The notes under the pieces are model-generated. The model was not told the DNA's origin. It worked only from the letters and a program-made list of their open reading frames with translations, and ran no database searches. 64,000 bases of DNA from Haplodiscus bocki (taxonomy: Eukaryota): positions 72,044,001 through 72,108,000 of the forward strand of contig OZ296652.1 of assembly GCA_965655095.1 (NCBI GenBank), read 5' to 3'. Positions 891-37,027 of the stretch are shown piece by piece. Position 1 is the first letter of the stretch; every line of letters starts with the position of its first letter. Both the position numbers and the translations under genes were made by a program.

Positions 891-1837
891 TGGATCTGTC
901 TACTCCGGGTCTGAGTTAACTGAATTGCCGGTCCGACAAGCAAAGAACTCCGCTTCAGGAAGGGGGTCATTCTGAAAACGATCCCCAGTTAGTTCCCGGG
1001 TTTCCACGTCATTGTTCCGGGATGTTCTCGGAACGGTTCCGGAGAGAGTCCATACCTGTGGGCTCAAGAGAAAGTTGTCTAATTTATACAGAGCACCAAA
1101 AATGCAAAACTCTGTCCTGCTGAATTCCTCTGGCAGTTTTTTTATTGAACCTCATTTCAATCTCCTCAAAAACCTGGTCATGTATTCCTCAGTAATTCCA
1201 GGCACGAACGTGTTCTGTGACTGGGCGTTCCTACGATGTTCTTGTGTTTCCCCTGAAACAGCTGCCATCTTTCGCTTGTTTCCTAATGGTGGCATCTCTT
1301 GAGGGGTAAATGTTCAACAGTAGTGAAGACTGATTTTTTTGCGTTTTTTTGATCAACTTCAGAGATTATAAGAAAAGTGTTTTTTTTTGAATAAAGCAAT
1401 CGCCACAATCTTTACAGTCAACTGATAGTTCAAGTGGAAAAAGCTTCTTTAGTATTACTTAAAAATTAAATTACTTTCGTTTCTCCTATTTATACCTTTT
1501 CCTTGGCGGGGAACATAGTCGTTTACACGACAAGTGAAGGTACAATTAGGGAAAAGCATTTCAATCATTTTAACTATAAATGAACAATGCCAACTATGAC
1601 TGGAAATAAACACCTTTTCATCCATCTCTTTCCTCATAGACAGCGATTCTGTCTCAATCTGGATTGATACACGGGGGTGATATGTATATGACACGTATTC
1701 ACTACAAGAAATATTTTTAACAGATAAAAAAACATAAAGTCCAGTGTTTGTTAGTTCCATCTATTTCCTAGACGATTCGGGGATGTCCTTTTCGTCCGGC
1801 AATACTTGCCCGCAGGCTTCGCGTACGTGCTCCGACT
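891..1837 (-). repeat. 3' LTR of the Gypsy element
   Basis: Follows purine tract AAGAAGAAAGGGAG (minus, 1851-1838). Starts AGTCGGAGCAC, homologous to the TGTCGCAGCAC starts of the solo LTRs at 38221 and 41921. Ends ...GATCCA at 891. 1060-1580 is nearly identical to 10897-11417. Confidence 0.75.
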
Positions 1838-5099: not shown

Positions 5100-6500
5100 G
5101 TCTCCAAAATCGGACTCTCATGCTCTGGCGTATAAATAATCAAGTTCAATGAAGATTTCAGGATCAGGTTTCTAATCCTGTGAAGTGGTTGGTACGTCAG
5201 GTATGGGTTCTTTCAGGTGAACGCTGGTAGTCGCGTGCGATGATAGTTAGGCGTTTTTTTTTCGTTTCAACTTTGCGTACTAAGTAGTTGTTGTTTAGTA
5301 GGGCTCCTTCAACGATGTAAGGCCAAATCCAACTGAAATCTAAGAAAAAATTCTACTGCCTTGATGTTCTGCTTGAGGTTTTAGCACAAAAACGCAATTG
5401 CGTTCTTTGATTTTAGAAGCACTTGTGTTTTTGTCAAAGTAGGCTTTGTAATTGGTGAGCGATTGCTTTACATTTTTCTGCACATCTTGCAAAACCATTT
5501 CTTTTTGCTCAAAAACACCTTGGCCAATCTGGGAAATGAGCATAGCTGATTGCTGTACACTAATGCCTTTTTTCAATTCAAGAACATTTTTCGTAACACG
5601 TCCGTGAAACATTCGACTATATTCGCACCCAATGCTTGTGTAGTAGGCCCTGTTGTAGTTTGGGACAGCAATGTTGACATACTTGTGCTACATTGATCTT
5701 CGTTAGCCTGCTTCTTATTTGAATGCTCTCTTTAATGAAGCATGTGTTCCCTCGACCATGCCAATCAACCGTTCATGCTTAGTTGTGGCATGTTGTAGAG
5801 TGATTCCAAAGACACCTGTTACTTCTTTTATCACTTGGGATAAAAAAGTTGATCCCTTGTCAGAAGTGACCGTCGTCGGCAAATATGCATGTTTGGTCAT
5901 GGTGTTAAATATGATGCTTCCAACTAGTTGGTTCGTTGTAGGGTAGGCAAACATATATCTGGAAAACACATCCGTGGTTGTAACGATGTCGTGGTAGCCA
6001 CCAGACAGAGGTAGTTCTGGAACCAGTTCATTTTTCATGGCATCTTTGGGTCCTGTGATCTGTTCACTAGGGTATTGTTGGGGTCGGCGGGTTAATTTGT
6101 TAACGATTTGTGATTTTTGATGCATTGCTGACTCGACATGACCCATTTTCTGTATAATTGCGGCATGTTTGGGTAGTAGTACTTCTGTGTGTACGCATTT
6201 ATTCCCTTGGTGGTTCCATGATGTCTACCAAAATCTCCGCGTAGGTTCCTGAGTATTTGATCAACAAGCTGTTTTGGTAAACGAACTTGGTATAAATTCA
6301 AACTAAGAGTTTCTCATTAGTACATTAGTATTTCTGGAACAAAATGCCATCTTTGAGTATTATGCCATTCTCAATTGCTGTGTAGTACTTGTATCGTTTA
6401 TAGTTGCCTGCAGCACTTCATGATAAAGTTGGCGTATGAATTTCGTTTTAAAATTCTTCAGTACTAGATCAAAGTTTTGCTCTAATAGTAGTGGTGCATT
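5100..6500 (-). pseudogene. Integrase remnants
   Basis: GDFGRHHG..YTQKYYYP (H2C2 region), LVPELPLSGGYHDIVTTTDVFSRYMFAYP, SDKGSTF and GMVEGTHASLK (rve core). Confidence 0.85.
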
Positions 6501-6879
6501 TGCTTTGATTCCATTCATGGCCAATAATGTAGTGTTTTTCTGGCAATCTACATAAACTCTTTGACACTAGTTTTCCAGGAGGATGGTTCTTCATTTGTTA
6601 TCCACTCTCTCGCATCATGCAGGGTTTGTTCTTCTTGTTTCAAGGTCTGTTCTTCTGACTGATTTTCGTTGTCTGCTTGGGAGAAGAAGAACTGTTTTTC
6701 ATGAAGGACATCCGAGGGGACTGTTGTCACCTGAATTGGTGTTGTCTGTATGTCTTCTCGGTTTTAGAGACGTACCTTCTCCGTAACTTCAAACTCCAGT
6801 CTGGAGAGGAAGTCAGCGGCTGTGGTGAAGGAAGGAACATGCAATATGTGTTTTTTAATTTTAAGTTGCAAACATATGC

Positions 6880-8260
6880 ACATGCGTTCCACTGCGCAAC
6901 TGGAATTACTTTCCTCTAGAAGAAACGTTTGACTGATTTTTCATCTATTGGGACAGACGTTGGTTTTGTTGTCTCCATAAAATATATGCATTTTCGTGAA
7001 ATGCCATATAGGTTGCTAAGGATCCTCTCGAGTAGATGGAAAAATGGAGTTGGTTGCGCAGTGGAGAGGTTTTCTGATCCGAGCGCCACGGGGGCGTACG
7101 TTTTCCGTTCTCATTGGATTTTCTGGTCTGCGTTACCCTCGGTCATGAGGGCATAAATAGTGCATCTGACGCTTGCATCCTACATCAAGACAAGCAATTT
7201 TCCTGGAACTGGTTGTTTTAACGCCAGTTCGCAAGCATTGTTGAGAACCTTGTTAACTGAATCAAATGATTTTTCAGTTCCCAGGAGAAACTGAATGGTG
7301 TTTCTACTTTGAGTAATTCGTAGAATGATTTAAGTTTTTCAGCCATCCTGAAAAAATACTTTATGTAGCAGTTCACAAAGCCCAGGTTGCACTGTAATGC
7401 CTTCAATGATTTAGAGAAATTGAGTTCTCTGGGAAAATTTTGAATTTTCCAAGGTTGCCAAGAAGCTTTTTTTGGTGATATGGTTGTGCCAAGCAATCCA
7501 ACATGTATAACACCAAAACGGCACTTTTGTTTTGTCGGTTTGAATTCTGCTAGGCTAATGCACTGCAAAACTACTGGAAGGTTCCGGGTAAGATCCGTAG
7601 CATTGCTTAATGCATCTCAGTATCGCCTACGAAAAGAGCAAATTGATCAGCTTTGACAACTGGGTCCAAATACTCACCCATTAAACTTCAAAAAGCAGGC
7701 ACAGATCTGCTGAGGTCTTGTGCAAATCTATTTTGGGCAAAATTTCTGGCAGAAAATTTGATTTCAAGCAATTCAAGTGACCGCTGGTACGCCATTTACA
7801 GGCAATGATAAGCTTGGAAACTTGGAGCTTGCAGAAGTGAGACTTTCCTGCTAAGTGCTGTGGTGCATCTGAAAAATTGCTGACTGCGTGAATTTTTGTT
7901 GGTATAATCATCTGCAATGAGAGTGTTGATTTTCTTGAGATCCAAAGGTAGACGTAGTTTTCTGTTGGGTTTTTTCTGTGCAATTATGGGATTGTGTACT
8001 TTGAAAAAAGCAGCAGTGTAATTATACCATAATTATGCATCAGAATCTATTCAACACTTAGGTCTTTTTTCAGTTGGATTGACGTTGGTAGGTTTCGGCT
8101 GTAAATAGTTTCATTATGTTTTGGCGTGAGTTTCACCTTGAACTCCCTGTTAATTCCATTGTTCTTTCTGTTTCTGGCAAAAATATCAAAATATTCAACC
8201 AAATATCTTCAACGGCTTTTTTTCAGTATGTCTAAGCAGTATGTCAATCCAATCAAATCG
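6880..8260 (-). pseudogene. pol: Reverse transcriptase and RNase H remnants
   Basis: Fragments such as HLAGKSHFCKL, KCRFGVIHVGLLG and LQCNLGFVNCY. The catalytic YxDD appears decayed to FVGD near 7625-7636. RNase H-like sequence at about 6900-7190. Confidence 0.8.
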
Positions 8261-8769
8261 CTCATTTTTCACACGATTCTGTTTCATCTTGTGGATTGAT
8301 TTTTTCTTTTGCCTTCAATTCAAGTAAATTTCTGATGATTCGTGTCTGTCTCGGAGTATGATCCTCAGGTTTGTCAGGACAATTGGGTGTCGGAAACCAG
8401 AATGTGTTGTTTTGCTCTTCTGGTTTGTGCAATTTAAGGATATCATTTTGGCAGGCAGTCAGATGCGGTTCACCTTCCGGAATCATATAGGAGATTGCTG
8501 CAACCACTGGTTTGATAAACTTGGATTGCTCCGGCGTGACAACGGAAAACTCTGCAATTGTTTATTCTTTTTAATCAGGTAAGGTGACTCCGTTGTGTTA
8601 GTTACTGCGCCTGCTATTTTCTTGTCAATTAATGTTGACATTGAGTGGGAAATCAGCAGACTTGCTGTCTTCGTGAAATTCTCCAGTGGTGTCACAGTGC
8701 CTGTTTTGTTCCATTCTGATGGATGATCAACCAGGTCTATGACTGCTTTCGTTGTCCTGGGTGGTAATC

Positions 8770-9282
8770 TCAGAGAGTCGTCAGTGACGACAGATTGTGG
8801 TTTGGATTAGTTTTGCTCGCAGCACTCTTGACTTGCATTCTCAAGTGCTGAAAAAGCATGAGACCCTGCCTCGTCTCAATGACTCCACTACTATGTCTCA
8901 TGAAATGCAAACCTATTATTGGCCCTGTCAAATTCCTCAAGACGACGAAATGTTCTGCAAAGGTAGTGTCTCGAATATCAAATTTGAGTGCGGTTGTTAC
9001 TAACGGTTTGTCTAACTGGCCATTAGCTACTTTTTTCCGAAAATGAGAGGGTCGTTGTTTTTGGAGACGTTGGCTGGGGTTTGTTGTTTGACTCTGTCCA
9101 ATTAGATTTTGGGCAATTGCACAGACATAGGCTCTTGAGTCTACTAAAGCGTCTTTTGCTAGTCCATTCTCGAAATCCAGAGGCACATACAGCATTTGTT
9201 TTCTGCCTTCCAGGACAATAGTGAAGGACAGTGGGAGATGCAATTCATTTGTTTGTTCATTTCTCACCAACCTCTCTTCCAT
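8770..9282 (-). pseudogene. Retropepsin aspartic protease
   Basis: ALVDSRAYVCAI (mutated DSG), VANG and IIGLHFMR motifs. Confidence 0.85.
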
Positions 9283-9699
9283 GTGAGGGGTTGTTTTTGT
9301 GAGCCGGGAATATTGTTATCTCTATTGCGGTTAGTCATTATGTGCCTATGTTTGGTCTGGATGTCCGTTTGACAACTAGTGGAGCTGTCGAAGAACGGTA
9401 CCAGTTTGTTCGCGGTGCGATTTTCTCCGAACTGTTGCCAGACAACAGTCTCAAAGCGTTGCTGCCGGAAAACCTGGAGATTTGATGGAGGTATTGTCGT
9501 TCTGATGGTCTCCGGTCTGTCAAGGGCAGTTCCAGAGTGAAGATGTGGCGTTTTTGAATTAGAGCTTAAGCCGGAGCCTAGACACTTCCATTTGGGTTCT
9601 TCTGTATACCTTGACGTTAATTCTGATTCTGTTTCGTCGGTCTTCTGTTCCAAGGAGGCGGTCTATTTGCTGCTTTGGCTCCAAAATATTATTTCTCTC

Positions 9700-11132
9700 T
9701 AAAGTGGCTGGTTTTTTGCAGCAGGTCTCACAGAATTGTTGTACAGCTCTTAAATTTGTGTCATTTCGGTTGTTGCTTTGTTAGCGTTGCTAATACTGGT
9801 ATCTTTGTTGTGAGGATTAAAAGTTGTCTGACCAATGTTATTAGTGTTCTTATCGTCAGCACTATTTTTGTTGCCCTTAGCTAGGATTTTCTCTCGCTTA
9901 GCTATGTTTTTAGCAAGGCAATGTGTTCGAGAATGGCCTGGTTTTGTGCAGTGGTGACATTTTGGCTTGCGTTTTTCAAGGTCTTGTTTTATGGAATGCT
10001 GTATCACAGTGTTTATTTGCACTTTATCTGGGGTTTCCAAACTGTTCAACTCTAACTCTATTTTTAGGTGCGACACATTCTGGTCATAGGTGCAGTTCTC
10101 CAATTGATCCTGATTCATGAATTTTATTCACGTGTGCAGACAGCTTGGCATATATGAATTGCTCAATAATCACTTGGGCAACAACTGCGAATGTGTCTTT
10201 TGCTAATTTCTAGAGTTCATCCAAAAAATCAATTAAATTCAGGTTCTCCGGGTTGAAAACTAGTCGTTGAATTTTTCGTTTCGTTGTAGCCTTTGACTGG
10301 GTTTTACCGTATTTTCTACGGAACACAGTCGGAATTTCTCCAAGATTCTCTCGGTTCGTGCTGCTGACGTCTTCGAACATACGCAGCGCGTCACCATTAA
10401 TGAGAGGTTGTAAAGAGTTTATTTTGCCATCATCCCTAAGCTGTTTGTGGATTTTGAGACTATTTTGGAACATATCTTCAAACAGTTCAACTTTCTCTGA
10501 TTTGCCATCGAAGGTAGGCATTGTTGTAGTGAGGGATTTGGCCAATTTGGAAATTCGACTGATGTTGTTGTTGACGTTGGCAGAAGTGCTATTACTTGCC
10601 AACAGCTGAAGGGCCATCAAAATCTGGTCTGCTTCAATCGTCGCAGGCGTGTTCTCACTGCGGAAATGCGGTTGACTGGTGGAGCGCGTCCTCATTTGTT
10701 TTCCTGAATAAGTCCGAGGCGAGCAACAGGGGAATTCTTCTTGAAATCCTGTCACCATGTGGGGTGTTTCGTCCGGATCGGAATCAATCGACTGGCTTGT
10801 CCGGCGGGTAGAGAACTCCACTGCCAGATGCGGATCACTCTGGGAACGCCCCCAGTTGGTTCCCGGTTTTCCACGTCATTGTTCCGGGATGTTCTCGGGC
10901 TCAAGAGAAAGTTGTCTAATTTATACAGAGCACCAAAAATGCAAAACTCTGTCCTGCTGAATTCCTCTGGCAGTTTTTTTATTGAACCACATTTCAATCT
11001 CCTCAGAAACCTGGTCATGTATTCCTCAGTAATTCCAGGCACGAACGTGTTCTGTGACTGGGCGTTCCTACGATGTTCTTGTGTTTCCCCTGAAACAGCT
11101 GCCATCTTTCGCTTGTTTCCTAATGGTGGCAT
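9700..11132 (-). pseudogene. gag: Gypsy gag (frameshifted) with zinc knuckle
   Basis: ORFs 10752-11132, 10210-10821 (MPTFDGKSEKVELFEDMFQNSLK) and 9750-10118 (CHHCTKPGHSRTHC, a CX2CX4HX4C motif). Confidence 0.85.
10743..10757 (-). promoter_or_regulatory. Primer binding site (TGGTGACAGGATTTC), possibly tRNA-Leu-like
   Basis: TGG directly after the LTR-terminal CA. The tRNA assignment is by resemblance only. Confidence 0.6.
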
Positions 11133-11570
11133 CTCTTGAGGGGTAAATGTTCAACAGTAGTGAAGACTGATTTTTTTGCGTTTTTTTGATCAACTTCAGA
11201 GATTATAAGAAAAGTGTTTTTTTTTGAATAAAGCAATCGCCACAATCTTTACAGTCAACTGATAGTTCAAGTGGAAAAAGCTTCTTTAGTATTACTTAAA
11301 AATTAAATTATTTTCGTTTCTCCTATTTATACCTTTTCCTTGGCGGGGAACATAGTCGTTTACACGACAAGTGAAGGTACAATTAGGGAAAAGCATTTCA
11401 ATCATTTTAACTATAAAGTAAAAAATGCCGACTCTGGTGGGAAATAAACACCTTTTCATCCATCTCTTTCCTCATAGGCCGCGTCTTTTCCATTTTTCGA
11501 CGGAAAATGTACTTGCCTAATGCGTCAGAAATGGACATCAAAGTGCTTATTCCCGCACCGACTCACCAGA
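10758..11570 (-). repeat. 5' LTR of the Gypsy element (outer boundary uncertain)
   Basis: Ends ...CCCCACA at 10758, directly followed by a TGG-starting PBS. TATAAATAGG on minus near 11322-11331. Homologous to 891-1640, 39028-39850 and 40334-41138. Confidence 0.75.
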
Positions 11571-14466: not shown

Positions 14467-15116
14467 AAATACTTGGGAAAAATTCACTGATAAAAAAGAC
14501 AACGACCCTACTGAATGATTAATTTTTCTTACATTCTTAAAAATATGTGGCGAAAAAATAACAACGCGCACACAACTTGCACACCTCTCAGACAGTAGTA
14601 ATGATGTGATGTTTGAGAAAAATCTTTGAAAACCAGTCTCAAAATACTCTTCTCGTTCATTTCTTAAACCTTTTCAAAAGTTGACCACAATACATTGCAG
14701 TCAGACGAAAAACATGCCGGTGCTATTCGGCTGTCTTGGTAAAAAAATTTTCACAGGAGTCGGTCTTGGGAGAAAGAAACATGATGTTAAGATTCATCTT
14801 AAGATTAGAGATAATATTCTGCAGATTACGATTGAAAGATCAACTTTGTAGGCGAGAGACATCGAAATTTATGGCAGAGGTGTTGTCTTTTCAGCAGTCC
14901 CACTCTATTCACTTTTATTTAATTTATTTAATTATTTAATTAGTTAAACTTTTGCCACACAATCTATAGTTAGACTTTGACACCAAAAAACACAAATCGG
15001 TGACATTAGAGATTGAGTCCTTGTTTTCCAAAGACACCGCGTGAACACAACACCATGAGCTATTGAATTGTATAACTCGAAAACTTTTCTGAAGACTGTT
15101 ATTATAGTCTTCAGAC

Positions 15117-17905
15117 GAACTATAGTACTATTTTTTGCAACCAACTAAAAAGTTTGTACAAATTTCAGTTTTGTAGTTGTAGTTCAACAAATACCGTAGT
15201 TGTATAATGATCAGGTTAAAACTAGCAACTTTTAACGGCAGAATTTGGGAAAAAATGGGTTCAAATTTTTTCCTAATTCACACTAAATTTGACTGTTTTT
15301 TATGAACATTTCGCAATTTGTTCCAGAAATTCCTTCCTGAGCAAGCCTTTTTCGTTAGAAAGTCGTAAATTAGAGGAAAATAGTTCGCGTTCAATTGTTG
15401 AGACCGCTTCCGAAAAGCGACTGATTATTTTTTCAACGGAATCACAATATAAATGTCTTCGAGCTTCAAATTCCAGTGGCAAGTAAGTTAAAGCTTTATG
15501 ATTGATTTCCCAAAAACCCATTTCTTAAATTTCTATTTCTGTTTTAGAAATAGCTTGAAATCGCGGAAACTCGCGGACGCTTCTGATTGTCCAAAGTTCG
15601 CGTTAACTGGAGCTTGCAAATTATTGTAGGGCCTGATATTAAACCTAACTTTGAAGAATAGTTTGTAATTCTTATTCCCCTCATACGAGCATGAGAATAA
15701 CATTCTTCTGTTTAAGGTGATTATATTGCTTCATCAACAGTGCATACCTCCAGCTGGCGAATGTACGCAGCTGTGTATAGAATTGTATTGGTTACTGTAG
15801 TTGGCACACTTCTCTTGTTCTTGTATGGCAGAGTAATTTTTGAAATACAGAAACGGAGAATACAGTCACGGAAACTCCAGAGGCAACTATCAGCTAGTAC
15901 TGCTATCGATGAAGCATCAGAGTTAGTGAAATTTGATGTAAGTTATCTTCCGCAAATGTAAACAAAGCGCATTATAGCACCGATGGTTTTTCAAATTGTT
16001 ACATTTTGGTTTAATAAAACCTTGGCTGTTCAAGGCTCTTCAAGCCAAAACCAGCACCGAGCGTCTCTATCTGAAATGTGCAGCTTTTCTTAACTCTTAA
16101 AAACCCAAAACTCATTTCACATTAATTGAGAATAAAACTCAAAGAACTTCAAAGTGCTCATCCGAGTGGGAAGAGAACCATCTTAGACTATTGAAATCGT
16201 AAAAATTCTTATGAGTAAGCATAATCCTACAAGCAGTAGTAGCGTATGTCATTTTGCTCAAGGGGTGGGGGGGGCGGAGGGAAGTTGACTGAGTAACCAG
16301 ACATGATCATTTACTCAACCCGACCCGAATAAATAAACACTATGTAATCGACAGCCGAGTCGACAATAACGTCACCGACAGGAGAACTTGGCTAGTCCAC
16401 GTGAAGCACCAGAGTCGTGAGCCAATTCCAAGCAACACTGAATGCCATACTCGATATGCATGAATAACTCTACAATTATTGTTCAAATGCAGAATCCTTC
16501 AGGATTATAAAGTTATCACAAAACAAATCGAGTTGACGGTGACGATACATGATGAACTATACCTGAACTCTGGCATTTCACTCCTCAAGGAGAGCTCTTG
16601 ACATCATCGAAACAGGACAAGAGAGTAATCTGAAACATGTTTCAAAATCGAAAAAAAAGTTTATTTTCAAATTGACTAAAGTACTCCAAAATACCATTGC
16701 ATGTTTTTCGTTGCCAAAAGGTCAGCTCATTCCTACTTCCTCGTTCTCCGTGTTACTATTTTTGTCGGTTTACATTCATTTTCCACTCTGTAAAACGTGG
16801 AGGAAAACAATTACCTGAGCGAAAGTTGAAATAACATCCTGTAATTTGAAAAATTCAACGCAGGGAACCTATTTCATTTTGTGTAGCTTCGCCGATCAGT
16901 AGTAGGTTGTAAAAACAGGTTGATGAAACTGTAACATTTCCGGCACTTTCCATACTGCCAAACTTGAAGGTGACAAGTAATAGCAGCAGGATTATGAGAA
17001 AACGTAATGCAATATAAAAACTTGCACAAAGTGACATCGTTTTAGAGTGCCTCATGATTACAAAAAGTAGAATTTTTGAAAGCACTTTTGAGGGACTTTG
17101 AACTTTTCATTTTTTTCAGCAATGTGAGATTCGATGATAAAAGTTTGAAAACGGCAAAAGTTGTGAAAGCTTGCTACATGTTGAACATTTGGTCGTCGTG
17201 ATCACACGTTACAATGAAGTGTTCAATTTTGCTGACATGTTAAATCTCTATTGTTGAAAATCTAAGGAGTTGTAACAGTTCCCACGTTTTTAGCAATTTA
17301 GGACGTGATAGGAGAAGAACAAAAGTGGCAGGAAAAAGGAAACTTTTTGCAATTATAAAAGAAGAACATAGCAATTTTTTGAAAAGTTTTCTTTTTGACT
17401 AAAAGTAGAGTCTTTTCATTCAAGTCTCAGAAAACAAATTTTCCGGAAGAGTCGATTTTGTGAGTTTGCGTAGTAAAAACAGAAGACCGCAAACAATTGA
17501 GGAATTTTGTTTCGACCTAGAAATTCCTACTTGGAGAACTTGTTTTGAACTGATTGTCATTTCAGAGCTGTGAGATTCCATAGACAAAATAAAACTGTAG
17601 AAAAACATTGGCAAGACTTTTTACAATTTGAAAACATGCATTTAGCAAACTTCGTGTTTGAAACGAATTTCATTACTGATCACTAGAAAGCTACATTGGC
17701 AAGGCGATGACACTGTTTCAATTCTGCCGCTTTCAGCATGGTGTGACTTGATGGGGGAAAACAGACACTGAAAAAAAAACAGAAAACTCATTGCAGTATG
17801 AAAACTGCAACTTGAAGACATTGTTTCACAGTACCTATTTTTGCTGATGAGAAGCATTTTCGATTGTGTTTCTAAACAATTTTGAAGTATCTGACATCTA
17901 TGGAA
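15117..17905 (+). repeat. Left arm of 2.8-kb inverted repeat
   Basis: Reverse complement of 24317-27105. Mirrored ORFs in the track: 15300/26700, 15740/26260, 16855/25135, 17420/24609. Confidence 0.95.
15717..15937 (+). pseudogene. Inverted (antisense) duplicate of the GPCR TM5 exon
   Basis: Identical translation and splice sites to 26284-26504, on the opposite strand, inside the inverted-repeat arm. Confidence 0.8.
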
Positions 17906-24316: not shown

Positions 24317-27105
24317 GTTCCATAGATGTCAAAAACTTCAAAATTGTTTAGAAACACCATCGAAACTGCTTCTCATCAGCAAAAGTAGGCAACTGTGAAA
24401 CAATGTCTTCAGGTTGCAGTTTTCATACGGCAAGGAGTTTTCTGTTTTTCTTTAGTGTCTGTTTTTCCCCATCAAGTCAAACTATGCTGAAAGCGGCAGA
24501 ATTGAAACAGGTTCTTCGCCTTGCCAATGTAGCTTTCTAGTGATCAGAAATGATATTCGTTTTAAACACGAAGTTTGCTAAATGCATGTTTTCAAATTGT
24601 AAAAAGTCTTGCCAATGTTTTTCTACAGTTTTATTTTGTCTATGGAATCTCACAGCTCTGAAATGACAATCAGTTCAAAACAAGTTCTCCAAGTAGGAAT
24701 TTCTAGGTCGAAACAAAATTCCTCAATTGTTTGCGGTCTTCTGTTTTTACTACGCAAACTCACAAAATCGACTCTTCCGGAAAATTTGTTTTCTGAGACT
24801 TGAATGAAAAGACTCTACTTTTAGTCAAAAAGAAAAATTTTCAAAAAATTGCTATGTTCTTCTTTTATAATTGCAAAAAGTTTCCTTTTTCCTGCCACTT
24901 TTGTTCTTCTATCACGTCCTAAATTGCTAAAAACGTGGGAACTGTTACAACTCCTTAGATTTTCAACAATAGAGATTTAACATGTCAGCAAAATTGAACA
25001 CTTCATTGTAACGTGTGATCACGACGACCAAATGTTCAACATGTAGCAAGCTTTCACAACTTTTGCCGTTTTCAAACTTTTATCATCGAATCTCACATTG
25101 CTGAAAAAAATGAAAAGTTCAAAGTCCCTCAAAAGTGCTTTCAAAAATTCTACTTTTTGTAATCATGAGGCACTCTAAAACGAATTCATTTTGTGCAAGT
25201 TTTCATATTGCTTTACGTTTTCTCATAATCCTGCTTCTATTATTTCTCATCTCCAAGTTTGGCAGTATGGAAAGTGCCGGAAATGTTACAGTTTCATCAA
25301 CCTGTTTTTACAACCTACTACTGATCGGCGAAGTTACACAAAATGAAATAGGTTCCCTGCGTTGAATTTTTCAAATTACAGGATGTTATTTCAACTTTCG
25401 CTCAAGTAAATGTTTTCCTCCACGTTTCACAGAGTGGAAAATGAATGTAAACCGACAAAAGTAGTAGCACGGAGAACGAGGAAGTAGGAATGAGCTGACC
25501 TTTTGGCAACGAAAAACATGCAATGGTATTCTGGAGTACTTTAGACAATTTGAAAACAAACTTTTTTTTCGATTTTGAAACATGTTTCAGATTACTCTAT
25601 TGTCCTGTTTCGATGATGTCAAGAGCTCTCCTTGAGGAGTGAAATGCCAGAGTTCAGGTATAGTTCATCATGTATCGTCACAGTCAACTCGATTTGTTTT
25701 TTGATAACTTTATAATCCTGAAGGATTCTGCATTTGAGCAATAATTGTAGTTATTCATGCATATCGAGTATGGCATTCAGTGTTGCTTGGAATTGGCTCA
25801 CGACTCTGGTGCTTCACGTGGACTAGCCAAGTTCTCCTGTCGGTGACGTTATTGTCGACTCGGCTGTCGATTACATAGTGTTTATTTATTCGGGTCGGGT
25901 TGAGTAAATGATCATGTCTGGTTACTCAGTCAACTTCCCTCCGCCCCCCCCCCCACCCCTTGAGCAAAATGACATACGCTACTACTGCTTGTAGGATTAT
26001 GCTTACTCATAAGAATTTTTACGATTTCAATAGTCTAAGATGGTTCTCTTCCCACTCGGATGAGCACTTTGAAGTTCTTTGAGTTTTATTCTCAATTAAT
26101 GTGAAATGAGTTTTGGGTTTTTAAGAGTTAAGAAAAGCTGCACATTTCAGATAGAGACGCTCGGTGCTGGTTTTGGCTTGAAGAGCCTTGAACAGCCAAG
26201 GTTTTATTAAACCAAAATGTAACAATTTGAAAAACCATCGGTGCTATAATGCGCTTTGTTTACATTTGCGGAAGATAACTTACATCAAATTTCACTAACT
26301 CTGATGCTTCATCGATAGCAGTACTAGCTGATAGTTGCCTCTGGAGTTTCCGTGACTGTATTCTCCGTTTCTGTATTTCAAAAATTACTCTGCCATACAA
26401 GAACAAGAGAAGTGTGCCAACTACAGTAACCAATACAATTCTATACACAGCTGCGTACATTCGCCAGCTGGAGGTATGCACTGTTGATGAAGCAATATAA
26501 TCACCTTAAACAGAAGAATGTTATTCTCATGCTCGTATGAGGGGAATAAGAATTACAAACTATTCTTCAAAGTTAGGTTTAATATCAGGCCCTACAATAA
26601 TTTGCAAGCTCCAGTTAACGCGAACTTTGGACAATCAGAAGCGTCCGCGAGTTTCCGCGATTTCAAGCTATTTCTAAAACAGAAATAGAAATTTAAGAAA
26701 TGGGTTTTTGGGAAATCAATCATAAAGCTTTAACTTACTTGCCACTGGAATTTGAAGCTCGAAGACATTTATATTGTGATTCCGTTGAAAAAATAATCAG
26801 TCGCTTTTCGGAAGCGGTCTCAACAATTGAACGCGAACTATTTTCCTCTAATTTACGACTGTCTAACGAAAAAGGCTTGCTCAGGAAGGAATTTCTGGAA
26901 CAAATTGCGAAATGTTCATAAAAAACAGTCAAATTTAGTGTGAATTAGGAAAAAATTTGAACCCATTTTTTCCCAAATTCTGCCGTTAAAAGTTGCTAGT
27001 TTTAACCTGATCATTATACAACTACGGTATTTGTTGAACTACAACTACAAAACTGAAATTTGTACAAACTTTTTAGTTGGTTGCAAAAAACAGTACTATA
27101 ATTCG
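24317..27105 (-). repeat. Right arm of 2.8-kb inverted repeat
   Basis: Reverse complement of 15117-17905. Confidence 0.95.
26284..26504 (-). CDS. GPCR internal exon (ECL2 end, TM5, ICL3 start)
   Basis: AAVYRIVLVTVVGTLLLFLYGRVIFEIQKRR. Acceptor ttctgtttaag (alternative cag at 26481) is phase-compatible with the phase-1 donor at 47375. Donor GAT|gtaagt. Confidence 0.75.
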
Positions 27106-27237
27106 CGTTATGGGCAAACAAGTTTCGTACGGGTTGTCGGCATTTTCGAGTGGAAAGCAGACATGGTTATCCGGCGACCGTCCTGTGGTATTAGGAAGAT
27201 GAAACAATAATTTTTGTATTCATTTGTGATAGTTGCG

Positions 27238-28911
27238 AGAAATATTGGTTGTCCGCATGGCTAGTAGGCGTGTTACCTCGTCTAAAACAGGTAGCTTCGC
27301 CGTTCTCAGCAGTTTGTAACTCTTTCCGACTCCCCAATAGGGCAAAAATTTCCTCAATTTGTCGTAGAATCGGCTCAATTGCTGTCTGATATGTTTACTT
27401 ACTGAAATATGTGTGACTTCACTCGTGGAAAACTCGTTATCTAGGGAGTTCATTTCGGGTTCTTGTTCATCTCTTAGCTTTATAGTTTCTGTGGAAATGT
27501 CGTGCGTTTGAGTGCTGTTTTCTGTTCCACTACTCATTAACTAGGGATAAGTAGACTGAAAGTTAATGTTTTGTAAAGGTTGTTATAGGTGATGCGTATT
27601 TCAGATCAGTGGAATCTTCTAAAGTGGTAGTAAATTACAAAATCACAGAGTAGAAAGTCGGATTGACGTTTTTTTACACCAGGGTTAATCGCAGTTATGT
27701 ACGTTACAAGGTATTGCGAAGTTATGATGAAGCTAGTAGCGGAAAATGGGCCGTAGATTAATTGTGCACGCAACAGAGTCACGTGATAATTTGAGTACTT
27801 CTCATTGGAGCTCAAACATGTACTCCACACTATTAGCTAGCACCAATTATCCTTACATTTATCTAACTTCTGAAACTACACTTTCATTTTCATTTAATTT
27901 TCATGATTGAAGCCACACGGGTGATTTTATGATAGCCTCTCTAATTGAATTGTATAATTATTTCATGTCTTTTAGCTCTATATATTGTCGATGGTAAATT
28001 GCTTGATTGACTGAAATGAGATTATACAGGGCTCACTGTCATTGTTTTTTTTTCGTAGCACTGAATGTACAAATACCTGAAATAAGGCTAGCAGTAGGCT
28101 TAATGCACTTTAAAGTTATTCCCGCGCCTATTTATTTAAATTTCACGAGAGTGAGGTCTGGTAAAGCTCACTCACAACATGGCACTACCGCCGCGCTGAA
28201 TATTGGACATTCGAGACCGAGGAGAAATATGGCTCATTCTCGATGATGAATTTTAATGATGTTCAAACCGTCTTGCACTTTGAGTGAAGTCTGCCATAGC
28301 TCACTCAAAACAATGAATTCGTTAATGCTGGTTCAAACTGCATCTTAGAGTGAGGTGTATGTCGGTTCACTCTAAACCATAAATTAGAATATCGACTCTA
28401 TGAACTGCACTGACGTGATGCGTATCGCGGCTGACTGCCGTTTGGTAAATTTTACTGACGGTGCAGTTGGATAATGCGGGATAGAGCTCATTTTCAATTA
28501 AAGATTTCGATATATGTAAAAACACTGGGCTTTAGAGTGAGGTGTATTGCGGCGCGGCTCACTCTGATGAGAGAAATTATGATGTGCAACATAACTACAG
28601 TGGAGTGTGGTGTATTGTAGCTCACTTCCGAATGATTTCCTAAACTATGGATTCTGGTGTGTGGCATGAATGGCATCAAGTGAGGTGTGTTCAGCATTAT
28701 TCGGCACGTGTGGAAATGTTACCTAATTGCGTTCATATCATTGGAAGAGGAAGTAATATTACATATTAGCTTTTATATGGACTGTATATAATGCTGCATA
28801 GGTTCGTATGCTTCAAGTGATACTACATAGGTGCAAGGGCTTCATAATAAGACATATGTTATATCTATAATTTATTTATATGGTTAGTATTTCCTTCATG
28901 GGTGCATTACA
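27238..28911 (-). mobile_element. Solo LTR (family Y) with palindrome array and gag N-terminal ORF
   Basis: Starts TGTAATGC at 28911 and is colinear with 35438-37027. ORF 27220-27537 begins MSSGTENSTQ. Confidence 0.7.
28015..28705. repeat. Array of about 11 short palindromes (GAGTGAG-N~11-CTCACTC) at about 66-bp period
   Basis: GCTCAC-type anchors at about 28031, 28098, 28166, 28232, 28299, 28365, 28430, 28486, 28557 and 28620. Confidence 0.85.
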
Positions 28912-30118
28912 GAGGTGATTAGAAATTTGTTCTTGAAAGTTCAGGAAACTCGACTTCATTTTTGCAAAATGGTTTTCAGGAACTAACGTACATCTTTTTA
29001 TCAACAAACTAATCTCTATATTGAAACTTGATAACTTTTGATCTTTAATTCATCCATTAGACTTATTCATAATCAAAGTTTCCTCAGTTGTTCGATCTTT
29101 ATTCTGTCATAAAAGCTTACAGAAGCAGTAGAGCCATCAAGTTTACTTGAGGGCAAAAAAAGCGGCCTTCTAGAGAAAATTCAGCCAATGACGATTAGGT
29201 TAACACTGACACTGATGAATCTCCGGTTGGTAATAAAGTCAAACCAATAGTTCAAGGAAAACTCGATGTTCAGATGAATTCTTACTTCCATACTCTGAAA
29301 GGAGAGGTAACCAAAGTGAAACAGCGGAATCAACAGCCAGCTGCTAGGCCAACCAACTAAAAACATCACACAACGACGACGTTCTGTTAAAAACGAACGA
29401 CGTCACTGTATCGACTACATCAAATTACTCATAATTTTGACAGAACTGACTCTTTTGAATAACTGTTTTTCACAGGTAATGTGATTACCCTAATGTTCAG
29501 CTGTTTTCTGAACTTTCAGAATTGACTTTCATTGAACTCTAATGAAAACTCTTTACTCTTAAACAAAATTGATTCAAAAAATACCAAATATAGCCGATTC
29601 TTTTATGTAGCCTCTAGTTATAATCAAGAAACTTGTCTTCTACAAAATGTATTTTCGATATGACGATTTACAAATTCTCAACACGGCGCCCAGCGTTTAT
29701 ATGAGGGCTCAAACTCATCCACACTTTGGCATTAAACTCCATTTTGAACTTAAGGGGATTTGGGGAGCTTTGTCTTTTTTAGGCCTTTACCGGTTTTCTA
29801 GGATGTGTAAATAGAGCGCTTCATCTTAATCGGAACTGCTTTCAAAGATTTGCGCTCCATTCCTGTTGGTTGAGTAACCCAGAACTATTGTTCAACGCAT
29901 TACCAGATAATGATGCACATTAGGTGGTTTTCTTAATCTCTAGTGCGAGCATTTCAAGTTAGTCTGAAACTGGTAAATGCTTGTTGTTTAATCAATTGAC
30001 AGGATCTTGCGGACAACCATGCCTTGCAAAAACTCAAAACCTAAGCTCATCCTCGCAAATGGCAACTAGTAACGTTCAAACTGGAGAGGCAAGTTTAAAA
30101 TGCCGTTGATAAGCATAA

Positions 30119-30630
30119 CAAGACACACGGCTACCTCCGGGATACTTTGCGCCCTCCAATTTTGTTAAAGATGACTTTTAGAAGGATGAAAGCGTATTTT
30201 TTTCCAAATACTCTTTCTTCGTCATATTTTCTAATTTTTTCAACTTCAATTTTTTTTGCTGATTTTTAGCCAAAAAAACCTCAAAAATAAGGTGGAAAGA
30301 CATTTTTAAGAAAAAAACCATTTGAGACGCATTCTAGAAAGAATTCGCCATATGTAGCGATTTTGAAAAAATTCAAGGTTTTTTCGAAAAAACCCATTTT
30401 TTTCCCCAAAAACCCAAACTTTGAACGTTTTGAGAAGTTTTACTATTTCAGTCACATTCTACGGCAAATTTAAAATTTGCTACAATTTGGTAAAAAAATA
30501 ATTTCACGTTCAGACGTGAACAAACTGCCGATGTTGGCGTGAACACAATTGGCAAACATCAGGTGAAAAAATGCACCTATTTGACAAGCACATTTTGCTT
30601 CCATATTTTAAATATGGCACAAAATAATAA
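30119..30630 (-). mobile_element. Helitron-like repeat copy
   Basis: Same family as 12933-14466. Confidence 0.7.
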
Positions 30631-30649
30631 ACCCTACAATATAACTAGT

Positions 30650-31560
30650 GCTGAAGCTGACATTCAGCAAACACTTTCAACAAAAAGCTAGGCACTCCAC
30701 CACTTATCGAAATGACAAAGTTCCTGAAAAAATATCTTTTTGAAAGCCCATTGAGAAATTTGTCGAACGTCCGATCGGCATCCTCTGAACTAGTACACAT
30801 GATCCGGAATGGCTCAAAACCCAATTGATCTTTAACACTCACTGATGCTGAGTAGATGCCTCATTTGCCCTTGGTCAATTTTAGCGATGTGACTTCATCA
30901 GAAGACGAAAAAGGCGCTCTTTGAGCACTGGAACAAACAAAAAACAAGTCGCCGGCAAGTATGAGGTTGGCTTATAAAGCTGCAAAACTCAGTTCTTCAG
31001 AAGCAAGTACCGTCTCCAGAAGTTGCCCTCTCACAGCGAGATTCACAAACTATCTCTGATGACTTGGAAAAAATTTAATTCCACAAACTCCGGAAGACGA
31101 GGCGCCTAATGGGGTCCGATTCTCCCTGAATACGCTCCCGTGAATCCCAACAAACTTGACAATGATCGCCGTGTTGCAAATTTTGTTGCCAAAAACAAAG
31201 GAGTTCATCTCAAGGATATGCTTCCTACAGCTCCATATCTCCTGGACAATTGGTTAACCATGCTAGCGTAACATTTTGTTTCATTGAACAAGAACTACCG
31301 ACTTCAGCTGATATGAAGGCATGTTTATGGACCCTTACATTCATCTTCAAGAGAAAACATTCTTTCGCTTTTTTGGAGATATATTGACTCCGACAACTTG
31401 ACGACAACTTTGGGTATGTTCGCCAACGTTTGACTGCCAATTGTACTCCAGCTTGCGGCAACTCCGCGATGCGAAAATGTACCACCTATCACTATCACAG
31501 TCAGTAGTTTGCTCATGTCAAACAATTGATTCATGAGTTATTCGACACGGGCTATTTATA
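30650..31560 (+). pseudogene. Possible BEL/Pao gag-protease relic
   Basis: Weak, decayed similarity (KLGTPPLI; LVNHASVTFCFIEQEL). Confidence 0.25.
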
Positions 31561-35437: not shown

Positions 35438-37027
35438 TGTCGTACCGGTTGTCCGCTGAGCTAGTGAACATGTCTTCACGCCGTGAACCGGTAGCTTCTG
35501 CTGTTTCCAGCGGTGTTCAAATCTGTCCGATTTGCCAATAGAGCGCATAATCTCTTGACCTGCCGAAGGATCGCTTCAGTTGCAAAATTAATTTGTTCGT
35601 TTGCTGATCGATCAGCGACTTCACCAACAAAGAATTCGTTTATTTTAAGTCCATGTTTCGAGCTTGTCCGGGTCCTATATCTCTGGTGTCTGAGGAACTA
35701 TTAAAAGTCTCCGTGCTATTTTCAGCTCCATTAACCATTGAAAAGAAAGAAGTTGAGTTTATGATATGCTGAATTTATACATCGAATGTTAGGTATTTTT
35801 AAAATCAGTGTACTTTAAGAAACATTAGTTTTGGTATAAATATACATAAAAGATCCTGTAAGTGACGTTGTGCCCGCAGCAGAGGTAAAACAAAATTTCG
35901 TATGTTACTACGGTGAAACAAAATTATGTTGTGTACTAACGCAAATTAAATCACCTGACGATTTCATTATTTTTCATTGTAGCGCACTTATGCACCTGTA
36001 ATAACTTCGTCAGCTAGCAAAAACTATCCCTGGAATTATCGCGTTTTCGAAACAGCACTTTAATAAACTGAATGATTTGACTGAACGGGTGATGCTAATT
36101 ATAATGGCATCACTAATTGCATCGTATAGTTATATCACTTTCAAGTTCCGAGCAGCTTAACTAACTAGAATGAGCCTGCGTACGGCTCACTTTGATTGAT
36201 TGTGTTTGTTTAGCATCGAGTGAAACAATAGTTGAAAAAATGCACTTCCAAGCTGTGCCGCGCCTATTTATATAAATTGCATTAGAGTGAGGTCTGGTAA
36301 TGCTCACTTTCAAAATGGAACCACCGCTGCGGTGCACAATGGTCACTCTCAATGAAGATTTTTTTTATGTTATGAAAACCTGACAGCATCTTTTAGTAAC
36401 GTGTGTGATGGCTCACTGTAAACAACGAATATCATGCCAGTTAGATCTAGGAGCACCTTTGGGTGAAGTGTGTAACGGCTCACCCAAAACAGTGAATTTC
36501 AGTACTGTATCTATTTACTGTGCAAAAGTGATGCGTGGTATAGCTCTCCTCGGATTGATGAATGTTTTTTGACGGTGAGTTCAATAGAACTGCAGTGATA
36601 CTTGACACTGCTTATTCGCAATTAATGATTCCTGATTACGTCAGGAGGCTTGATTTAGAGTGAGGTCTGTTAAGGCTCACTCTAATTACTAGAAGCAATG
36701 GCATGAGATTTAGCTGTAGTGAAGTAAGGTGTGTTGTAGCTTACCTCCAATTGATCTTCTAAGTTATGGTTCAAGGTGGGTAGCATAATTTTTGTCAGAT
36801 GAGCTGTGTTAAGCATCGCTTTTCCACGTGTATAAATTTTACATATTCGGGTTTCTATCATTGGCAAAGGAAGTAAATGTACATATTGGCTTTCATATCG
36901 ACTATAGATGATGCTGAAAATGTTGGTGTGTATTAGGTGCAACTAAATAGATTAAAAAAATTCATATTAGGACATAAACAGAGTGCATAATACAAAAGTA
37001 AAGTATTTCTTTGACGCTAGCATGGCA
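35438..37027 (-). mobile_element. Solo LTR (family Y), second copy
   Basis: TG...CA termini with flanks GTGAC/GTGGC (5-bp TSD, 1 mismatch). Decayed ORF MVNGAENST...EQINFATEAILRQVKRLCALL. Confidence 0.75.
36168..36820. repeat. Homologous palindrome array in second family-Y LTR
   Basis: Anchors at about 36185, 36302, 36411, 36478, 36543, 36675 and 36739. Examples: gggtgaag...ctcaccc and tagagtgag...ctcactcta. Confidence 0.8.

What the first reader, a model, noticed from the sequence alone, without database searches (positions are those of the whole stretch)
28015..28705. CRISPR-like array of regularly spaced palindromes inside an LTR
Seen: about 11 units of a 24-30 bp hairpin motif (GAGTGAGgt-N-gCTCACTC) recur every ~66 bp, separated by ~40-bp spacers that differ greatly from each other. 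Stems often vary while staying paired (TGAGTGA/TCACTCA, TAGAGTGA/TCACTCTA, TAAG/CTTA). A TATA-like element (minus strand, about 28126-28138) lies between units 2 and 3 and points at the gag-like ORF 27537-27220, so most units are upstream, in U3. Inference: this is a selected array, not a neutral minisatellite. Options are phased binding sites for a dimeric factor (about 6 helical turns apart), processing hairpins that release small RNAs from the 3' LTR transcript, or recombinase-type sites. Caveat: the spacers share faint motifs (tgaatt...tgca), which fits ancient tandem amplification. No cas genes are present.
Basis: partly seen in the sequence, partly recalled or inferred. Interest (0 to 1): 0.85.

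Follow-up and report, generated by a model that had tools for sequence, protein, structure and literature searches.

The report
Palindrome array in a retrotransposon LTR
Ten evenly spaced 25-base mirror-image motifs sit in the control region (LTR) of an old, very abundant Ty3/gypsy-type jumping gene; they are most likely that element's multi-site enhancer, nothing CRISPR-like, and the two copies in this window are decaying relics.

Summary
The array is real. Window 28014-28702 (minus strand) holds ten units of a 7-nt arm, 11 nt, 7-nt arm palindrome (GAGTGAG-N11-CTCACTC), 64-67 bp apart.

It lies in a 1.67-kb LTR (27237-28912) with TGT..ACA ends and 5-bp target duplications. The LTR family has hundreds of copies, 68-78% identical to this one. 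Gag starts inside the LTR, and Ty3/gypsy-type pol follows in longer copies.

The "spacers" are not CRISPR-like. Each one is the same orthologous sequence in all 29 copies compared.

Between copies the stems decay neutrally, with no excess of compensatory change. Between the ten paralogous units the cores stay alike (0.64) while the linkers have drifted to background (0.29 against 0.26). Each unit's outer stem matches its own partner (P about 0.003-0.013).

The array is therefore an ancient tandem amplification whose palindromic cores were kept while the element was active. The most likely role is a row of dimer-binding sites forming the enhancer just upstream of an AT-rich TATA-like box. Stem-loops acting in RNA or single-stranded DNA remain possible.

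No RNA data exist, so the transcription start is not mapped. Other first-stage notes report similar LTR hairpin arrays on other DNA of this genome.

The parts
27237..28912 (-). Copy A of a 1.67-kb LTR, probably a solo LTR. The 5' end is TGTAATG.. at 28911. The alignable 3' end is at 27247; the last ~9 nt (GGTACGACA in other copies) have diverged in A.
   Evidence: Sharp common ends in about 17 genomic copies. 5-bp TSDs in 5 of 11 copies against 0 of 44 controls. Flanks are unrelated between copies.
28149..28702 (-). Main array, units u3 to u11 (nine units), upstream of the AT-rich box. In LTR orientation each core is GAGTGAG-N11-CTCACTC.
28678..28702 (-). u11, degenerate in all copies. Only the 3' arm (CCTCACTT) is clear.
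28603..28627 (-). u10. In the family this is GGAAGTGAG..CTCACTCC: 6 bp, one A.C mismatch, then 1-2 more pairs.
28535..28564 (-). u9. 8-bp perfect stem in A, which carries a private 5-nt loop insertion. The stem is 11 bp (TTTAGAGTGAG/CTCACTCTAAA) in many copies.
28474..28493 (-). u8, degenerate unit. A has a private 11-nt deletion here.
28413..28437 (-). u7. Decayed in A (3 of 7 pairs). It is GAAGTGA/TCACTTC in most copies.
28348..28372 (-). u6. 9-bp perfect stem, TTAGAGTGA/TCACTCTAA.
28282..28306 (-). u5. 9-bp perfect stem in A, TTTGAGTGA/TCACTCAAA.
28215..28239 (-). u4. Decayed in A (5 of 7 pairs). Modal pairs give a 10-11-bp stem, CGAGAGTGAG/CTCACTCTCG, seen intact in several other copies.
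28149..28173 (-). u3. 7-bp perfect stem. It is the unit nearest the AT-rich box.
28122..28141 (-). AT-rich TATA-like box followed by GGCGCGG. It could also be read as an ATTAAA-type poly(A) signal.
   Evidence: TATAWAW in 2 of 29 copies; a distant relative has a TTTAAATAG box directly after its own palindrome array; better TATAWAW strings lie further upstream in the LTR.
28014..28038 (-). u1, an outlying unit 136 bp (two periods) downstream of u3, beyond the AT-rich box. It is AGTGAGC/GCTCACT in most copies.
27220..27537 (-). 105-aa ORF. Its start corresponds to the gag start inside the LTR, but the frame in A is partly shifted relative to the family's gag.
   Evidence: In L033 the gag ORF crosses the LTR end. 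L039 carries the homologous N-terminus.
35438..37027 (-). Copy B of the same LTR, 8.1 kb away and about 66% identical to A, with the same units in the same order. u4 is mostly deleted.
   Evidence: Flanks GCCAC/GTCAC read as a 5-bp TSD, 4 of 5 (read).

Best explanation
The array is the upstream regulatory block (probably U3) of the LTR of an old, high-copy Ty3/gypsy-type LTR retrotransposon.

It began as a tandem amplification of a 66-bp unit, partly organised as a 133-bp two-unit block. While the element was active, only the 25-bp cores were kept alike; the roughly 41-bp linkers drifted apart.

Each core is a hyphenated palindrome with a fixed 11-bp centre and an asymmetric conserved extension (..CACAC next to the 3' arm). 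This is the anatomy of a site for a sequence-specific dimeric DNA-binding protein.

Ten such sites end 10-15 bp before an AT-rich TATA-like box. Together they would act as a multimerised enhancer and promoter-proximal element driving transcription towards gag, which starts about 600 nt downstream, still inside the LTR.

The copies in this window are solo-LTR relics that now decay neutrally.

Shown: the array, its family context, the conservation pattern, and the neutral decay of copies. Inferred: protein binding, enhancer role, and position relative to the transcription start.
For: LTR identity:
- Common sharp ends TGTCATG...GGTACGACA.
- 5-bp TSDs in 5 of 11 copies against 0 of 44 controls.
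- 52 scored matches out of 849 candidates.
- Gag reads out of the LTR. The gag family has 3719 candidates. The Atlas gives Retrotrans_gag/Ty3_capsid at 0.94.
- Downstream ORFs run in the order PR-like (E 0.054), RT (Atlas 0.96), RNase H (E 1e-3), integrase C-terminus (E 2e-4).
- Intact relatives carry RVT_1, RT_RNaseH, Integrase_H2C2 and rve.

Sequence-specific conservation of cores:
- Match probability between units is 0.64 for arms, 0.51 for loops and 0.29 for linkers, against a background of 0.26.
- Every unit has exactly N11 between the arms.

Position: the last unit abuts the AT-rich box.

Independent parallel: a distant gag relative from another assembly has a 60-bp x 3.8 tandem array. 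Each unit holds a different palindrome (ATGAGTT-N7-AACTCAT), and the array ends directly at a TTTAAATAG box about 1 kb before gag. Two further relatives carry other repeated palindromic motifs upstream of gag.

Known precedent: the ERV9/LTR12 U3 region has 5-17 tandem ~41-nt repeats carrying NF-Y, GATA and MZF1 sites (PMC11853044).
Against: - No transcript data exist, so U3 against R/U5 is unproven.
- A plain homodimer site does not explain why outer stem positions differ between units yet pair with their own partner: 26 of 40 against 16.7 +/- 3.3, P 0.003-0.013.
- The factor is unknown. Resemblances recalled from memory (a T-box-like CACACCT; RUNX-like ACCACA in some loops) are untested.
- The units are not in helical phase (about 6.3 turns).
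Confidence: 0.5

Rival explanations
1. The palindromes work as stem-loops in nucleic acid: either in the genomic RNA (U3 or R at the 3' end, or the 5' leader if transcription starts upstream of the array) or in single-stranded replication intermediates. They would be repeated cis signals bound by the element's own Gag/NC or used in strand transfer, packaging or dimerisation.
For: - Unit-specific complementarity of outer stem positions, with both-sided differences between units at five positions.
- A compensated G:C to A:T pair in one unit of the relative's array, and two both-sided differences between the two palindromes of L051.
- Predicted hairpins of -9 to -12 kcal/mol, with single units reaching z -2 to -4.6.
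- TATA-like strings upstream of the array would put it inside the transcript.
Against: - Core arm sequence is invariant between units rather than covarying, and loop bases are conserved asymmetrically. Recognition is therefore sequence-specific.
- There is no excess of compensation between 29 copies and no G.U bias: 121 G.T against 141 A.C.
- The whole array folds no better than shuffles on the LTR sense strand (z -0.98), and z is -2.5 on the other strand.
- Rfam finds nothing.
Confidence: 0.2
2. A functionless relic: an old tandem repeat in an LTR whose short palindromes persist through mutational mechanisms (intrastrand template switching, or short-tract conversion between units) rather than through selection.
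For: - Present copies decay neutrally.
- Residual linker homology shows a tandem-repeat origin.
- Tandem repeats in LTRs are common (and general knowledge).
- Template switching can make paired changes in a single step (general knowledge).
Against: - Cores stayed near-identical (0.64, close to the ceiling of about 0.75 set by copy decay) while linkers reached background. Neutral drift would erode both.
- Units keep their own loop types and outer stems, so wholesale conversion is unlikely.
- The same palindrome-array-then-AT-box layout, with a different palindrome, occurs in a distant relative.
Confidence: 0.15
3. A row of binding sites with a chromatin role rather than an enhancer role, such as an insulator or boundary like the Su(Hw) site cluster of Drosophila gypsy, or a target for host repressors.
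For: Many equivalent sites at regular spacing within a Ty3/gypsy element. Sequence-specific cores.
Against: The array abuts the core-promoter-like box instead of lying in the leader as in gypsy. Nothing here distinguishes this role from an enhancer.
Confidence: 0.08
4. A CRISPR-like, small-RNA-producing or recombinase-site array with acquired spacers.
For: Superficial repeat-spacer look in a single copy.
Against: - Spacers are orthologous in all copies.
- This is a eukaryotic transposon with hundreds of copies.
- Repeats are degenerate.
- The stems are too short for Dicer- or Drosha-type processing (general knowledge).
- No cas-like genes and no Rfam match.
Confidence: 0.02

Closest known systems
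Tandem-repeat enhancers in retroviral or ERV U3 regions, e.g. ERV9/LTR12 (5-17 repeats of ~41 nt with NF-Y, GATA and MZF1 sites; PMC11853044). The 72-75-bp U3 repeats of murine leukaemia viruses are cited from my own knowledge.
   Same: Head-to-tail units inside an LTR, upstream of the core promoter. Each unit carries the same short conserved motif. Unit number changes by in-register deletion or duplication.
   Different: Here the conserved part is a 25-bp hyphenated palindrome, and the rest of each unit has diverged to background. The host is reported to be an acoel worm, and the element is Ty3/gypsy. The factor and the enhancer activity are untested.
Su(Hw) binding-site cluster (insulator) of Drosophila gypsy (own knowledge)
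   Same: About a dozen spaced copies of one protein-binding motif inside a Ty3/gypsy-group element.
   Different: The gypsy sites are non-palindromic, about 25-30 bp apart, and lie in the 5' leader outside the LTR. These are palindromes 66 bp apart inside the LTR, next to a TATA-like box.
CRISPR repeat-spacer arrays
   Same: Partly palindromic repeats of 25-30 bp alternate with unlike spacers of about 40 bp.
   Different: The spacers are fixed, orthologous sequence in every copy. The repeats are degenerate. The context is a eukaryotic retrotransposon. There are no cas genes and no polarity of acquisition.
Pao (Bombyx mori) LTRs with tandem copies of the putative R region (own knowledge, not checked here)
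   Same: A tandem array inside an LTR of an invertebrate LTR retrotransposon. It would be the model if the array turns out to be transcribed (R).
   Different: Those units are whole repeats of R. Here the linkers are unique, which argues against frequent register shifts during strand transfer.

Membership tests
LTR of an LTR retrotransposon (Ty3/gypsy type) | Terminal TG..CA dinucleotides at sharp, shared ends | tested here: met
   5'-TGTCATG...GGTACGACA-3' in many copies.
LTR of an LTR retrotransposon (Ty3/gypsy type) | 4-6-bp target-site duplication | tested here: met
   5-bp flanks match at 4 of 5 or better in 5 of 11 copies, against 0 of 44 shifted controls. Copy B has GCCAC/GTCAC.
LTR of an LTR retrotransposon (Ty3/gypsy type) | gag and pol (PR-RT-RH-IN) downstream of a 5' LTR | tested here: met
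   Gag continues out of the LTR in L033. L047 has PR-like, RT, RNase H and IN C-terminus in that order; each hit is weak. Intact relatives have full Pfam sets.
LTR of an LTR retrotransposon (Ty3/gypsy type) | Primer-binding site complementary to a tRNA next to the 5' LTR | tested here: inconclusive
   TGG follows the LTR end directly (TGGTGACAGGAGTCCA). A pattern search for a matching tRNA 3' end found only element copies.
LTR of an LTR retrotransposon (Ty3/gypsy type) | Two LTRs flanking one internal region | tested here: not met
   No LTR pair was found among the fetched loci. L031 and L032 are segmental or tandem duplications. Further fetching was blocked. This means no full-length copy was seen, not that none exists.
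U3 tandem-repeat enhancer | Repeated units upstream of the transcription start, inside the LTR | tested here: inconclusive
   Units end 10-15 bp before an AT-rich box. Alternative TATA-like strings lie upstream of the array. There is no RNA data.
U3 tandem-repeat enhancer | Each unit carries a conserved factor-binding motif | tested here: met
   Conservation is met: arms 0.64 and loops 0.51 against linkers 0.29. Actual binding is not testable with these tools.
U3 tandem-repeat enhancer | Enhancer activity | not testable with these tools
   Needs reporter assays.
CRISPR array | Spacers differ between copies or strains (acquisition) | tested here: not met
   Linker columns are as conserved between 29 copies (0.70) as the rest of the LTR (0.70).
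CRISPR array | Near-identical direct repeats and adjacent cas genes | tested here: not met
   The repeats share 14 arm bases with mismatches. TRF sees no repeat. The context is a eukaryotic transposon.
Neutral minisatellite | Units alike over their whole length | tested here: not met
   Linkers are at background apart from a few pairs. TRF is negative.
Conserved structured RNA | Compensatory base changes in homologous sequences | tested here: inconclusive
   None between copies: 24 against 21.3 +/- 4.2. Modest signal between paralogous units. No Rfam family.

The most novel reading that the evidence does not exclude
The ten palindromes are not enhancer sites. They would be repeated stem-loop signals in the element's RNA or single-stranded DNA, for example multiple Gag/NC binding, packaging or dimerisation sites, or aids to strand transfer if the array is R. 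Each would be kept paired by matched changes. A distant relative would use the same design with a different stem. As far as I know, such a multi-hairpin cis element has not been described for Ty3/gypsy elements.
Probability: 0.15. Interest if true: 0.6.

Novelty: new member of a known kind. Interest (0 to 1): 0.3.

Why it matters
It removes a false lead: there is nothing CRISPR-like in a eukaryote here. It also documents an abundant, undescribed Ty3/gypsy family whose LTR carries a clean natural experiment. Ten paralogous 25-bp palindromes were kept while everything between them drifted, which marks them as the functional core of the LTR.

If the genome is indeed an acoel, as other notes of this scan say, the motif is a ready-made probe for a strong, probably dimeric, transcription factor in an animal group with almost no known cis-regulatory grammar. 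Hundreds of dispersed copies could have seeded binding sites near host genes.

The unit-specific stem pairing leaves open a more unusual role as nucleic-acid hairpins.

Tried and rejected
- TRF on 26000-31000 found no array. Autocorrelation was only weakly periodic. Generic hairpin counts in the LTR equal shuffles, 9 against 6.8. Only the specific motif is enriched.
- Between-copy covariation, a G.U against A.C bias test, and core-against-linker conservation between copies were all essentially null. Arms are about 5 points more conserved than linkers, at A/T positions only.
- Search for a full-length element: the candidate pairs L031 and L032 are a 99.96% segmental duplication and a 3.5-kb tandem duplication. 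L033 and L047 have a 5' LTR with internal ORFs but no 3' LTR within reach.
- Pfam on the L033 ORFs gave nothing.
- The search for a tRNA matching the PBS found only element copies.
- Rfam on the region gave no match.
- Sequencing runs: only DNA runs of one study, no RNA.
- Whole-array RNA folding: z -0.98 on the LTR sense strand and -2.5 on the antisense strand. This is not decisive.
- Cross-species comparison: gag relatives from another assembly (L050, L051, L053) share no LTR sequence or GAGTGAG motif. The L050 region is absent from this genome. L054 shows no LTR pair, so the LTR status of the relative's array is unproven.
- Literature searches found no description of this array or of acoel LTR families.
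- Naming the transcription factor would rest on memory only, so I left it as a lead.

Full report
**What is there.**
- Read on the minus strand, window 28702-28014 contains a recurring motif: GAGTGAG, 11 nt, CTCACTC.
- Copy A has four perfect stems of 7-9 bp (u3, u5, u6, u9).
- With up to 3 mismatches the motif occurs 12 times in the 64-kb window against 1.41 expected. No shuffle of 100 reaches 12, and 10 of the 12 hits lie in two places, 28014-28627 and 36168-36682.
- TRF reports nothing, and whole-sequence autocorrelation at lags 66 and 133 is only z = 3-4. The periodicity therefore resides in the cores, not in the whole unit.

**Context: an LTR.**
- The region belongs to a 1.67-kb dispersed repeat.
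- A search of the window's own 1.5-Gb genome gave 52 scored matches out of 849 candidates, 68-78% identical to copy A.
- The matches share sharp ends at window 28911/28912 and 27247.
- The termini read TGTCATG...GGTACGACA.
- Five of eleven copies with both ends have 5-bp flanks matching at 4 of 5 or better, against 0 of 44 shifted controls.
- The flanks of different copies are unrelated. Most copies are therefore solo LTRs.
- In L033 an ORF begins inside the repeat and runs 560 nt beyond its end. That downstream protein has 3719 candidate relatives in the genome.
- The Atlas places this protein with Retrotrans_gag/Ty3_capsid at 0.94.
- In L047 the following ORFs give, in order, a protease-like hit (E 0.054), a reverse transcriptase (Atlas 0.96), RT_RNaseH_2 (E 1e-3) and Integrase_p58_C (E 2e-4).
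- Intact distant relatives from another assembly carry RVT_1, RT_RNaseH, Integrase_H2C2 and rve.
- The sequence directly after the LTR starts with TGG, but I could not find a matching tRNA.
- Copy B (35438-37027) is a second LTR of the family, about 66% identical to A.
- Other agents' notes call this genome an acoel worm. I did not verify that.

**Anatomy across 29 copies.** I aligned 29 copies and used column statistics only. No consensus of the element was built or printed by me.
- Ten units (u1 and u3-u11) occupy fixed places.
- Unit-to-unit spacing in family coordinates is 75, 64, 66, 67, 65, 67, 67 and 66 bp. There is then a 136-bp step across the AT-rich box to u1.
- Units that look poor in A are good in most other copies. 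Examples are u4 CGAGAGTGAG/CTCACTCTCG, u7 GAAGTGA/TCACTTC and u1 AGTGAGC/GCTCACT.
- All units have exactly 11 nt between the 7-nt arms.
- The loop is itself conserved and asymmetric, with C[C/T].. after the 5' arm and ..CACAC before the 3' arm. Two loop types partly alternate.
- Exact GAGTGAG-N11-CTCACTC occurs 430 times in the genome against 2 for the reversed control, with loops of these types.

**Selection, then and now.**
- Between copies, arms, loops, linkers and the rest of the LTR have nearly the same column identity: 0.748, 0.708, 0.701 and 0.696.
- The small excess in the arms is confined to A/T positions.
- Stems decay by one-sided mismatches. The paired fraction is 0.748 against 0.747 after shuffling partners.
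- Compensated cells number 24 against 21.3 +/- 4.2, and G.T mismatches number 121 against 141 A.C.
- Copy B has three compensated pairs, which is not significant among 29 copies.
- The genomic copies are therefore neutral relics, and the spacers are ordinary orthologous sequence. This rules out any CRISPR-like acquisition.
- Changes in unit number are in-register deletions (L013, L022, L027, L030) and one partial duplication (L020).
- Between the paralogous units the picture is different. Match probability is 0.64 for arms, close to the ceiling set by copy decay. It is 0.51 for loops, 0.41 for outer stem positions and 0.29 for linkers, against a background of 0.26.
- A few linker pairs (u5-u8 0.48, u6-u7 0.46) exceed the 99% null of 0.424.
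- The array is thus an ancient tandem amplification. Its cores were preserved during the element's active life while the linkers drifted.
- Outer stem positions differ between units (CGAGAG/CTCTCG, TTAGAG/CTCTAA, GAAG/CTTC). They pair with their own partner more often than with another unit's flank: 26 of 40 against 16.7 +/- 3.3, P 0.003-0.013.

**Promoter context.**
- After u3 the family reads an AT-rich box followed by GGCGCGGGAAC. Only 2 of 29 copies have TATAWAW there.
- TATAWAW is present in 39% and 31% of copies at LTR positions ~22-36 and ~108-140, upstream of the array.
- Against that, a distant relative (L050; gag E 3e-25, 27% identity; another assembly; its region is absent from this genome) has a 60-bp x 3.8 tandem repeat. 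Each of its units contains ATGAGTT-N7-AACTCAT.
- One L050 unit carries a compensated G:C to A:T pair. The array ends directly at TTTAAATAG, about 1 kb before gag.
- L051 has two palindromes 68 bp apart, ATGTAGG/CCTACAT and ATGTGGT/ACCACAT. L053 has clustered ATCTGCA/TGCAGAT repeats before a TATA-like string.
- No RNA run exists to confirm this placement. I could not confirm that L050's array lies in an LTR.

**Mechanism.**
- Sequence-specific conservation of both arms, a fixed 11-bp centre and an asymmetric conserved extension point to recognition by a protein. The simplest case is a dimer on double-stranded DNA.
- Ten such sites abutting the core promoter would make a multimerised U3 enhancer. 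This is a known kind, as in ERV9/LTR12 (PMC11853044).
- The unit-specific outer pairing is not needed by that model. It keeps open a role as stem-loops in RNA or single-stranded DNA, or a mutational origin by template switching.
- Folding gives -9 to -12 kcal/mol per unit. There is no clear whole-array signal: z -0.98 on the sense strand and -2.5 on the antisense strand. Rfam has no match.
- My odds are: enhancer sites 0.5, functional hairpins 0.2, relic 0.15, chromatin or insulator role 0.08, CRISPR-like or small-RNA role 0.02.

**Verdict.** This is a real and neatly built feature, but it is an ordinary kind of thing: a tandem-site regulatory array in a retrotransposon LTR. The copies here are dead, and the CRISPR-like reading is refuted. 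First-stage notes on other windows of this genome describe what look like the same arrays. I did not test them.

Noticed in passing
all LTR copies (alignment): Columns whose commonest bases form CpG are clearly less conserved between copies (0.616) than other columns (0.708). This suggests CpG hypermutability, and hence DNA methylation, of these transposon copies.
   Followed up: partly
window 15116-17905 and 24318-27105: A 2.8-kb inverted duplication, 98% identical. One arm ends 130 bp from the 3' end of LTR copy A.
   Followed up: no
window 904-1645 and 10772-11483: A direct repeat pair (90% overall, a 300-nt stretch 99% identical) 9.8 kb apart. It looks like the LTRs of another, unrelated element. 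No ORF between them exceeds 203 aa.
   Followed up: no
G000:C7:37368863-37372180 and G000:C1:15710329-15712728: Four gag-fragment matches spaced about 1000 bp apart, all with open 147-aa frames, and three more about 1 kb apart on C1. These are tandem arrays built from a piece of this gag.
   Followed up: no
L031 1-2270 / 7063-9332; L032 2364-5494 / 5872-9001: A 99.96% identical 2.3-kb segmental duplication 7 kb apart and a 3.5-kb tandem duplication (98.9%). Each includes a copy of this LTR and mimics an LTR pair.
   Followed up: yes
L051 3775-3795: A perfect 14-bp palindrome, TGGTCACGTGACCA, with a CACGTG E-box centre, about 220 nt before the gag start of an intact Ty3/gypsy relative. ATGTGGT/ACCACAT motifs recur around it.
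   Followed up: no
L054 15219-15598: A ~140-bp tandem repeat just downstream of pol in the intact relative. No LTR pair was detectable within 7.4 kb after pol.
   Followed up: no
L034 7370-7834: A trypsin-domain ORF (PF00089, E 2e-15) 3 kb downstream of one LTR copy. Presumably an exon of a host gene.
   Followed up: no
L050 1057-1259: A second tandem array (22 bp x 9, TTCAAAGTTCGGATATAACGTT-like) 1.5 kb upstream of the palindrome array of the relative.
   Followed up: no
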